DNA from: Octopus sinensis | Lineage: Eukaryota | Length of the DNA stretch: 64,000 bases | Reading direction: 5' to 3' | Assembly: GCF_006345805.1 (NCBI RefSeq) | Contig: NC_043001.1 | Coordinates: 50,964,001 to 51,028,000 of the forward strand | Shown: positions 1,019 through 62,589 of the stretch, piece after piece | Layout: each line of letters opens with the position of its first letter | Numbering within the stretch: position 1 is the stretch's first letter | Translations under genes and position numbers: made by a program | Notes under the pieces: model-generated | Told to the model about the DNA's origin: nothing | What the model saw: the letters and a program-made list of their open reading frames with translations, nothing else | Database searches by the model: none

Positions 1019-1119
1019 CTATTCATCAATTCTAGCTGAACCTTTAGGGTATCATGTCAATAAGAGGCTTGGAGATACCATCAGTAAACTAAACAGAAAC
1101 TATGTTAATGCATGGATTG
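1019..1119 (+). CDS. Exon 1 in window: C-type lectin domain, middle part
   Basis: ttctttgtAG acceptor, Gtaaat donor. Peptide [33 protein letters not shown](G) has the LA...WIG C-type lectin signature. Its phase-1 end fits exon 2. Not in the ORF track. Confidence 0.75.

Positions 1120-62589: not shown

What the first reader, a model, noticed from the sequence alone, without database searches (positions are those of the whole stretch)
1019..62589. Uninflatable-like giant gene with a remodelled ectodomain: PAN inserted, discoidin domain apparently absent
Seen: a 20-exon frame encoding CLECT-LDLa-CUB-PAN-CUB-CUB-CCPx7-HYRx2. From memory of insect uninflatable, the opening CLECT-LDLa-CUBx3-CCP order matches. 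So does the run IDCG.P..PG...AG.S...N.V.C...G.W.F..L.C.GP.C.DPG.P.D..Q...SYE.G..V...C.RPGY...CVD.E.P.F.NCP (exons 16-18). In uif an F5/8 type C domain sits in that last CCP and an EGF interrupts the CCP run. Here exon 17 goes directly into HYR1 and no EGF or FA58C exon was found. Inference: a lophotrochozoan uif-family paralog with its own architecture, a candidate apical-surface, Notch-modulating or immune-recognition protein.
Basis: partly seen in the sequence, partly recalled or inferred. Interest (0 to 1): 0.7.

Follow-up and report, generated by a model that had tools for sequence, protein, structure and literature searches.

The report
Octopus uninflatable-family giant receptor gene
The window holds 20 exons of an already annotated but unstudied Octopus gene for a giant cell-surface protein of the fly "uninflatable" type; only one of its three apparent oddities, the loss of two small EGF modules, is special to Octopus.

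Summary
Twenty AG/GT-bounded exons (1019-62589, + strand) splice into one 1222-aa frame. This frame is letter for letter residues 75-1296 of RefSeq XP_036359320.1, "uncharacterized protein LOC115212292" of Octopus sinensis (2874 aa). The order is CLECT-LDLa-CUB-PAN-CUB-CUB-CCPx7-HYRx2-CCP-like.

The protein is collinear at both ends with about 25 giant proteins from molluscs, an annelid, hemichordates and a nematode.

- **Discoidin.** Their absence here is the normal non-ecdysozoan state, not a loss.
- **PAN.** It is real and occupies exactly one phase-1/1 exon. Argonauta, Elysia and two unionid bivalves share it, so it marks a molluscan paralogue, not Octopus.
- **EGF.** The Octopus-specific change is loss of a two-EGF block of about 100 aa between CCP3 and CCP4. 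It is present in all 25 relatives and absent from both Octopus species, with no trace in intron 13.

I could not retrieve Drosophila Uif, so direct orthology is untested. Interest is modest.

The parts
1019..1119 (+). exon 1 of the window (internal exon of the gene): middle of the C-type lectin-like domain
   Evidence: AG/GT, phase 2 in and phase 1 out; Pfam Lectin_C over model aa 21-104; aa 75-108 of XP_036359320.1
4376..4603 (+). exon 2: C-terminal half of the C-type lectin-like domain
   Evidence: tblastn to the Argonauta orthologue 55%
6145..6255 (+). exon 3: LDL-receptor class A module
   Evidence: Pfam Ldl_recept_a 25.1 bits, model aa 106-146
11186..11319 (+). exon 4: first half of CUB1
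   Evidence: acceptor read; Pfam CUB, 3 stretches
11655..11862 (+). exon 5: second half of CUB1
14769..15002 (+). exon 6: PAN/apple module, 78 codons, phase 1/1; a one-exon insertion between CUB1 and CUB2
   Evidence: PAN_1 in 4 of 6 orthologous modules; PDB profile hits are only apple domains; AF2 pLDDT 76.6 and Foldseek PAN folds; block absent in 21 relatives
15843..15994 (+). exon 7: first half of CUB2
19539..19743 (+). exon 8: second half of CUB2
22324..22505 (+). exon 9: first half of CUB3
   Evidence: best CUB stretch is model aa 459-571
26566..26731 (+). exon 10: second half of CUB3
28487..28660 (+). exon 11: CCP1
   Evidence: Sushi E 1e-10
35911..36084 (+). exon 12: CCP2, divergent
   Evidence: no Pfam hit; four Cys plus Trp pattern; aligned with CCPs of relatives
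38420..38581 (+). exon 13: CCP3, short
   Evidence: Sushi 19.1 bits, E 0.0017
38582..42405 (+). intron 13: the place where all relatives carry two calcium-binding EGF modules plus a linker (about 100 aa); nothing is left of them here
   Evidence: no tblastn match to Argonauta aa 765-871; no Cys-rich ORF; family EGF-pair HMM best 7.8 bits in six frames against about 120 bits in orthologues; Pfam on ORFs
42406..42579 (+). exon 14: CCP4
   Evidence: Sushi E 4.9e-13
46348..46542 (+). exon 15: CCP5, divergent
   Evidence: no Pfam hit; four Cys; 72% identical to Argonauta
48477..48674 (+). exon 16: CCP6, atypical six-Cys CCP; start of the family-wide conserved run
   Evidence: acceptor read; Sushi E 0.13; conserved across the family
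50053..50238 (+). exon 17: CCP7, complete in one exon; in the two ecdysozoan-type relatives an F5/8-C domain is inserted inside this CCP
   Evidence: Sushi 19.4 bits; alignment with the 152-residue insert in P0133 and Trichuris only
51502..51741 (+). exon 18: HYR1
   Evidence: HYR E 2.5e-7
56575..56820 (+). exon 19: HYR2, divergent
   Evidence: HYR E 0.0087 alone; the Argonauta orthologue gives 2 HYR stretches
62392..62589 (+). exon 20: six-Cys CCP-like module; the gene continues beyond the window
   Evidence: no Pfam hit; 48% identical to Argonauta; the RefSeq protein continues for 1578 more aa

Best explanation
The window contains 20 internal coding exons of Octopus sinensis LOC115212292. 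This gene encodes a 2874-aa single-pass type I membrane protein.

Shown. The window encodes the membrane-distal part of the ectodomain: C-type lectin-like domain, LDLa, CUB, PAN/apple, two CUB, seven CCP, two HYR and a CCP-like module. Outside the window the RefSeq protein continues with ephrin-receptor-like repeats, an EGF array, a laminin-G domain, a third HYR, another CCP, two more ephrin-receptor-like repeats, one transmembrane helix and a tail of about 110 aa. The protein belongs to an old bilaterian family with the same order of modules at both ends. Its two ecdysozoan-type members have the domain inventory published for Drosophila Uninflatable.

Three separate events explain the 'remodelled' look:
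1. The two F5/8-C domains were never present in the molluscan, annelid and hemichordate branches. In the sampled set they occur only in the nematode Trichuris and an unplaced metagenome protein that groups with it.
2. A PAN module was added as one symmetric phase-1/1 exon between CUB1 and CUB2 in one molluscan paralogue.
3. In the Octopus lineage, after its split from Argonauta, the two-EGF block between CCP3 and CCP4 was deleted cleanly at a phase-1/1 junction, which keeps the frame.

Inferred, not shown. By analogy with Uif the protein should sit on the apical cell surface. The window-encoded modules would act as the ligand-binding or adhesive head, and the downstream EGF array could contact Notch-type EGF proteins. 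Loss of the calcium-binding EGF pair should shorten the CCP stalk and change its stiffness.
For: - Exon model and identity to XP_036359320.1.
- Full architecture and single transmembrane helix.
- Family. An exhaustive HMMER search with the C-terminal fragment P0051 gave many 3000-5000 aa proteins matched over query 3-685 in one stretch. The same proteins match the window's N-terminal model collinearly, with E down to 4e-175. Names are Lottia, Haliotis, Sinanodonta, Potamilus, Owenia, Trichuris, Saccoglossus, Ptychodera and a second Argonauta gene.
- Presence/absence matrix.
- F5/8-C in P0133 by Pfam (E 8.5e-21, 2 stretches). phmmer finds both copies in P0133 and Trichuris only. Their positions are shown.
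- Uif inventory (CLECT, 3 CUB, 8 CCP, 2 FA58C, 3 HYR, 18 EGF-like): PMC3340373.
- PAN.
- EGF loss. Both Octopus species lack the block and Argonauta keeps it.
Against: - No Drosophila or other insect Uif sequence could be obtained, so family membership rests on collinearity with a nematode protein and an unnamed metagenome protein, plus a published list of domains without their order.
- The NJ tree that groups the PAN-bearing genes has only 56% bootstrap, and it also contains PAN-less Lottia_1. PAN could therefore be older and lost repeatedly.
- No transcript data were examined. The junctions rest on RefSeq models and splice signals.
- All functional statements are analogy.
Confidence: 0.8

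Rival explanations
1. The missing EGF pair is an assembly or annotation artefact. The exons would exist in Octopus but be collapsed, misplaced or skipped only in the modelled isoforms.
For: Intron 13 is AT-rich and full of microsatellites (GC 0.226 at 40-42 kb), the sort of sequence that assembles badly. No RNA data were examined.
Against: The window has no N. The O. sinensis isoforms X1-X3 that span this junction, and both O. bimaculoides models from a separate assembly, lack the block. The family HMM and tblastn find no trace in any frame of the 64 kb. The junction is an in-frame phase-1/1 join.
Confidence: 0.06
2. It is a generic CUB-Sushi-EGF mosaic (SVEP1-, CSMD- or cubilin-like) with only superficial likeness to Uif. 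The 'family' would be convergent domain order.
For: The highest-scoring named hits in the word-indexed searches, after the orthologues, were cubilins and a CSMD3-like protein. UniRef calls several members 'Fibropellin-1'. None is named uninflatable.
Against: The cubilin, CSMD3-like and SVEP1-like hits cover only 9-40% of the query (mostly about 20%) through repeated domains. Family members match over 860-1200 of the 1222 aa in order, and again over about 680 aa at the C-terminus. Non-domain linkers and the atypical CCP6-CCP7-HYR1 run are conserved residue by residue. Elysia has a separate SVEP1-like protein (P0034).
Confidence: 0.08
3. PAN is ancestral to the whole molluscan (or wider) family and was lost many times, rather than gained once in one paralogue.
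For: PAN-less Lottia_1 falls inside the PAN-bearing group in the NJ tree, and support is weak (56%).
Against: PAN is absent in all 21 other members, including annelid, nematode and hemichordate proteins and the second paralogues of Argonauta and Potamilus. One gain plus at most one loss needs the fewest events.
Confidence: 0.15

Closest known systems
Drosophila melanogaster Uninflatable (Uif, CG9138)
   Same: Both are giant single-pass membrane proteins. The published inventory lists CLECT, three CUB, eight CCP, three HYR and an EGF-like array (PMC3340373). Octopus has one CLECT, three CUB, seven CCP plus a six-Cys CCP-like module plus one further possible C-terminal CCP seen by eye, three HYR, an EGF array, laminin G, a transmembrane helix and a short tail. 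Laminin G in Uif is from my own knowledge.
   Different: Octopus has no F5/8-C domains (Uif has two). It has no EGF pair inside the CCP run and it has an extra PAN module. The Uif literature calls it 'a conserved insect protein' (PMC13178913).
Trichuris muris A0A5S6QUS0 (P0085) and metagenome protein P0133
   Same: Both are collinear with the Octopus protein at the N-terminus (E 2e-95 and 3e-97) and at the C-terminus (E 5e-48 and 1e-29). The LDLa, CUB, CCP, HYR, ephrin-receptor-like, EGF and laminin-G order is the same.
   Different: They carry two F5/8-C domains, one between the two EGFs and one inside CCP7. They have no PAN and they keep the EGF pair.
Argonauta hians GAB1602870.1 (P0001), the closest orthologue outside Octopus
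   Same: 65% identity over aligned columns, the same exon-sized modules, PAN present and no F5/8-C.
   Different: It keeps the 107-aa block with two calcium-binding EGF modules between CCP3 and CCP4, which Octopus lacks.
Vertebrate SVEP1 and invertebrate SVEP1-like or CSMD-like proteins
   Same: They share a module vocabulary: CCP, HYR, ephrin-receptor-like, EGF and a pentraxin or laminin-G-like domain.
   Different: No VWA domain or long CCP array was found here. The SVEP1-like and CSMD3-like hits cover only 9-15% of the query. They are separate genes in the same molluscs.

Membership tests
Uninflatable (Uif) family | N-terminal CLECT followed by three CUB domains and a run of CCP modules | tested here: met
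   Pfam Lectin_C, Ldl_recept_a, CUB x3 and Sushi. The order is read directly from the exon order.
Uninflatable (Uif) family | two F5/8 type C (FA58C) domains (PMC3340373) | tested here: not met
   There is no F5_F8_type_C hit in the protein or in intronic ORFs. phmmer with the P0133 FA58C copies hits only P0133 and Trichuris. All 23 other relatives, none of them ecdysozoan where named, also lack them.
Uninflatable (Uif) family | EGF modules interrupting the CCP run | tested here: not met
   The block is present in all 25 relatives and has 0 residues in both Octopus species. No remnant remains in the window.
Uninflatable (Uif) family | three HYR modules | tested here: met
   HYR1 E 2.5e-7. HYR2 E 0.009 and HYR3 E 0.0011 are just below Pfam's cut-off, but they align with the strongly scoring HYRs of P0085 and P0133.
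Uninflatable (Uif) family | long EGF-like array, single transmembrane helix and short cytoplasmic tail (outside the window) | tested here: met
   The full RefSeq protein P0004 gives 7 Pfam EGF stretches plus further hEGF and EGF_3 stretches, and Laminin_G_3. It has one strongly hydrophobic 19-mer starting at residue 2747.
Uninflatable (Uif) family | collinear sequence homology with ecdysozoan proteins that have the Uif domain inventory | tested here: met
Uninflatable (Uif) family | reciprocal best hit with D. melanogaster Uif | not testable with these tools
   Three word-indexed searches and the one exhaustive search returned no insect Uif. No other source of the sequence was on hand.
Uninflatable (Uif) family | apical membrane localisation and interaction with Notch | not testable with these tools
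   This needs an experiment. It is known only for Drosophila (PMC3340373, PMC12867482).
PAN/apple domain (exon 6) | match to the Pfam PAN models | tested here: inconclusive
   Octopus alone scores 14.9 bits against a 21.4 cut-off, Argonauta 20.1 and Elysia 24.1. Four of six orthologous modules hit PAN_1.
PAN/apple domain (exon 6) | apple fold: an antiparallel sheet packed around one helix | tested here: met
   The AF2 model has pLDDT 76.6 and the element order E-E-H-E-E-E. Foldseek top hits are SML-2, the Eimeria PAN module, the HGF N domain, MIC4 apple and plasminogen PAN, with TM up to 0.70 although E is only 8e-3. The PDB profile search hit only apple domains, E 4.5e-4.
SVEP1 / CSMD / cubilin | VWA head with a very long CCP array (SVEP1), alternating CUB-CCP array (CSMD), or about 27 CUB domains (cubilin) | tested here: not met
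   There are three CUB and at most nine CCP modules (seven CCP, a CCP-like module and one further possible CCP), and no VWA. These proteins cover at most 9-40% of the query.

The most novel reading that the evidence does not exclude
Uninflatable is not an insect invention. It would be one branch of an ancient bilaterian family of apical giant receptors, and molluscs would have duplicated the gene. One copy gained a lectin-like PAN head module. The Octopus lineage then deleted the otherwise invariant calcium-binding EGF pair from its stalk. This would be a stepwise re-tooling of ligand recognition and stalk mechanics, with a new cephalopod-specific function.
Probability: 0.25. Interest if true: 0.45.

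Novelty: new variant of a known kind. Interest (0 to 1): 0.3.

Why it matters
The Uif literature treats the protein as a conserved insect protein with roles in tracheal inflation, endopolyploid growth, glial wrapping and Notch modulation. Collinear relatives in molluscs, an annelid, a nematode and hemichordates suggest that the scaffold predates insects. They also suggest that the F5/8-C domains were added later, in the branch that includes the nematode. This gives a natural series of domain variants (with or without F5/8-C, PAN, or the EGF pair) for asking which modules matter. For Octopus itself the practical result is a name and a family for an uncharacterized 2874-aa protein. The finding is ordinary exon shuffling in a mosaic ectodomain, not a new kind of system.

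Tried and rejected
I used P0051, an 819-aa O. bimaculoides fragment of the C-terminus. This found the family but no insect Uif in the best 150.
2. Three homologous-protein searches returned orthologues, then cubilins, enteropeptidases and other mosaics. The first did not even list the 100%-identical RefSeq protein, so absence from these lists says nothing.
3. The look-up of encoding contigs gave no DNA for P0133 and had no record for P0004. The organism of P0133 and the Argonauta exon structure therefore stay unknown.
4. Zhang & Ward 2009 (PMC2790384) is not held. No paper gave the order of Uif domains. No paper holds the term 'uninflatable-like', and none of the listed mollusc, annelid or octopus papers mentions uninflatable.
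5. Rfam matches below the gathering score (mir-297, mir-466 and others) all lie on microsatellites and were dismissed.
6. The 138-aa stretch after exon 20 (outside the window) has no Pfam match. It is not a hidden F5/8-C domain, because the relatives that do have F5/8-C carry it elsewhere.
7. The NJ tree is weakly supported and was used only as a guide.

Full report
**What the window is.** The sequence is 35% G+C, has no N, and is full of microsatellites and interspersed repeats. On the + strand a chain of stop-free segments carries Cys-rich extracellular modules. I listed acceptors and donors around each segment and demanded a continuous frame. This gave 20 exons, all AG/GT: 1019-1119, 4376-4603, 6145-6255, 11186-11319, 11655-11862, 14769-15002, 15843-15994, 19539-19743, 22324-22505, 26566-26731, 28487-28660, 35911-36084, 38420-38581, 42406-42579, 46348-46542, 48477-48674, 50053-50238, 51502-51741, 56575-56820 and 62392-62589. 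Together they make 3668 nt and one open frame of 1222 aa. Sixteen exons are phase 1/1; the six that split the three CUB domains carry a phase-0 junction in the middle.

**Identity.** The 1222 aa are an exact substring, residues 75-1296, of XP_036359320.1, "uncharacterized protein LOC115212292 isoform X2" of Octopus sinensis, 2874 aa.
- Isoforms X1 and X3 differ only downstream of the window. X4 has another start.
- O. bimaculoides LOC106881248 is 88% identical over the whole length.
The gene is annotated but has no name and no literature.

**Domains.**
- Pfam on the spliced protein gives Lectin_C, Ldl_recept_a, three CUB, Sushi and HYR.
- Exon by exon, exons 11 and 14 are clear Sushi. Exons 13, 17 and 16 are borderline. 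Exons 12 and 15 give no hit but keep the four cysteines and the position of a CCP. HYR1 is clear and HYR2 is weak.
- The full protein goes on with ephrin-receptor-like repeats, an EGF array, a laminin-G domain, a third HYR, two more ephrin-receptor-like repeats, one transmembrane helix starting at about residue 2747, and a tail. By eye a further CCP-like stretch follows the third HYR.

**PAN.**
- Exon 6 alone scores 14.9 bits on PAN_1, below the cut-off.
- The module at the same place scores 20.1 bits in Argonauta and 24.1 bits in Elysia, above the cut-off. Four of six orthologous modules hit PAN_1.
- A profile of the six modules hit only apple domains in PDB: TgMIC4 2ll3 at E 4.5e-4, SML-2 2yil, and 4a5v.
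- An AlphaFold model from that alignment has mean pLDDT 76.6 and the strand-strand-helix-strand-strand-strand order of an apple domain.
- Its Foldseek matches are almost all PAN folds: SML-2, the Eimeria PAN module, the HGF N domain, the MIC4 apple domain, leech antiplatelet protein and plasminogen. TM reaches 0.70, but E is no better than 8e-3.
- I accept the PAN call.

**The family.** The word-indexed protein search found only an Argonauta hians protein (P0001, 65% identity over aligned columns) and an Elysia crispata protein (P0002, 30%), then cubilins and other mosaics.
- It returned dozens of 3000-5000 aa proteins matched over query 3-685 in one stretch.
- About 25 of these also match the window's N-terminal model in order, with E down to 4e-175 and up to 1198 of 1222 residues covered.
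- Named members come from Lottia (two genes), Haliotis (two), Batillaria, Nucella, Bulinus, Lymnaea, Sinanodonta, Potamilus (two), Mactra, Argonauta (a second gene), the annelid Owenia (two), the nematode Trichuris muris, and the hemichordates Saccoglossus and Ptychodera.
- None is called uninflatable.

**Link to Uif.** I could not obtain any insect Uif sequence, so the link is indirect.
- Xie et al. 2012 list for Uif one CLECT, three CUB, eight CCP, two FA58C, three HYR and 18 EGF-like repeats (PMC3340373).
- The metagenome protein P0133 has LDLa, three CUB, CCPs, two F5_F8_type_C stretches (E 8.5e-21), three HYR, ephrin-receptor-like repeats, an EGF array and laminin G.
- phmmer with either P0133 copy finds both copies in P0133 and in Trichuris, and in no other of the ~200 proteins collected.
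- One copy lies between the two EGFs that interrupt the CCP run. The other is a 152-residue insert inside CCP7, just before HYR1.

**The three 'remodellings' compared** (alignment of 27 members).
- PAN: 74-78 residues in both Octopus species, Argonauta_A, Elysia, Sinanodonta and Potamilus_A; zero in the other 21. The block coincides exactly with exon 6, 78 codons, phase 1/1.
- EGF pair plus linker: 93-110 residues in 23 members, and about 255 in Trichuris and P0133 where an F5/8-C sits inside it; zero in both Octopus species.
- F5/8-C: only Trichuris and P0133.
- So the absence of discoidin is the normal state outside the nematode/P0133 branch. PAN marks a molluscan subgroup. The EGF loss is the Octopus-specific event, later than the split from Argonauta.
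- Argonauta and Potamilus each have both a PAN-bearing and a PAN-less gene, so molluscs have paralogues.
- An NJ tree on 927 columns groups the PAN genes with Lottia_1 at only 56% bootstrap. Octopus plus Argonauta_A gets 100% and Trichuris plus P0133 gets 95%.

**Is the EGF loss real?**
- tblastn with Argonauta residues 765-871 finds nothing in the window.
- Intron 13 (38582-42405) has no Cys-rich frame and consists largely of AT-rich sequence and microsatellites.
- An HMM of the block from 23 relatives scores about 120-128 bits on orthologues but at most 7.8 bits anywhere in the six frames of the window.
- Pfam on all sizeable + strand ORFs from 26.5 kb to the end finds only the known Sushi and HYR exons, a reverse transcriptase relic and a mariner transposase.
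- Two independent Octopus assemblies give the same junction.
- An artefact is unlikely but not excluded without transcript reads.

**Function (inference).** The window encodes the outer part of the ectodomain.
- The lectin-like domain has QPS and WSL where canonical calcium-dependent sugar binders have EPN/QPD and WND. This is read from the sequence using my knowledge of C-type lectin domains. It may therefore not bind sugar in the classical way.
- The apple domains that PAN resembles include galactose-binding lectins (SML-2 in complex with 1-thio-beta-D-galactose; for MIC4 this is my own knowledge).
- By analogy with Uif the protein would be apical, and its EGF array, which lies outside the window, could meet Notch (PMC3340373, PMC7444548).
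- None of this was tested.

**Verdict.** The gene is an annotated, uncharacterized member of a Uif-type family with a variant architecture. The variation arose through ordinary gain and loss of symmetric exons. Interest is modest.

Noticed in passing
window 398-516 (+): There is a full-length match to 5S ribosomal RNA (Rfam RF00001, 84.6 bits against a gathering score of 38, model positions 1-120). It lies in the intron upstream of the first exon in the window, next to microsatellites. It could be a dispersed 5S gene, a pseudogene or a 5S-derived retroelement head.
   Followed up: partly
window 55102-56435 (+), intron 18: This is a Mos1/mariner-type DNA transposon. It has 58-nt terminal inverted repeats (81% complementary) that flank a transposase split over two overlapping frames (55278-55544 and 55430-56338). 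Pfam gives Transposase_1 at E 5e-24 and HTH_48 at E 2.7e-6.
   Followed up: partly
window about 33600-35200 (+), intron 11: A frameshifted reverse-transcriptase relic (Pfam RVT_1, E 9.6e-15) is spread over several overlapping ORFs, for example 34610-35180. It is probably a decayed LINE.
   Followed up: partly
window 7039-7621 and 12275-12855 (+), introns 3 and 5: Two similar ORF clusters ('...[28 protein letters not shown]...') look like further mariner-type transposase relics. I saw them only in the ORF listing.
   Followed up: no
window, at least 20 places, e.g. 558-710, 2355-2511, 21774-21937, 22562-22716, 35647-35800, 36405-36556, 56991-57360: Two short interspersed modules of about 155 nt each recur in both orientations inside the introns, at 72-88% identity. 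This looks like a SINE family.
   Followed up: partly
window 14907 onwards (+), overlapping exon 6 in another frame: The predicted N-terminus of RefSeq isoform X4 (XP_036359321.1, '[15 protein letters not shown]...') is read from the exon 6 region in a different frame before joining exon 7. It looks like a model built to find a start codon for an internal transcript start.
   Followed up: partly
homologues P0002/P0053 (Elysia) and P0001 (Argonauta): The Elysia model ends in about 500 aa of a 13-residue tandem repeat (ACPLGRFTDIVDI). The Argonauta model ends in a Sleeping Beauty-type transposase HTH. Both are probably annotation errors at the 3' end.
   Followed up: no
relatives P0085 (Trichuris) and P0101 (Saccoglossus): Pfam does not recognise the two F5/8-C domains of the Trichuris protein at E <= 0.01, although phmmer links them to those of P0133. 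In Saccoglossus, HYR1 is replaced by a Thr-rich mucin-like stretch.
   Followed up: partly
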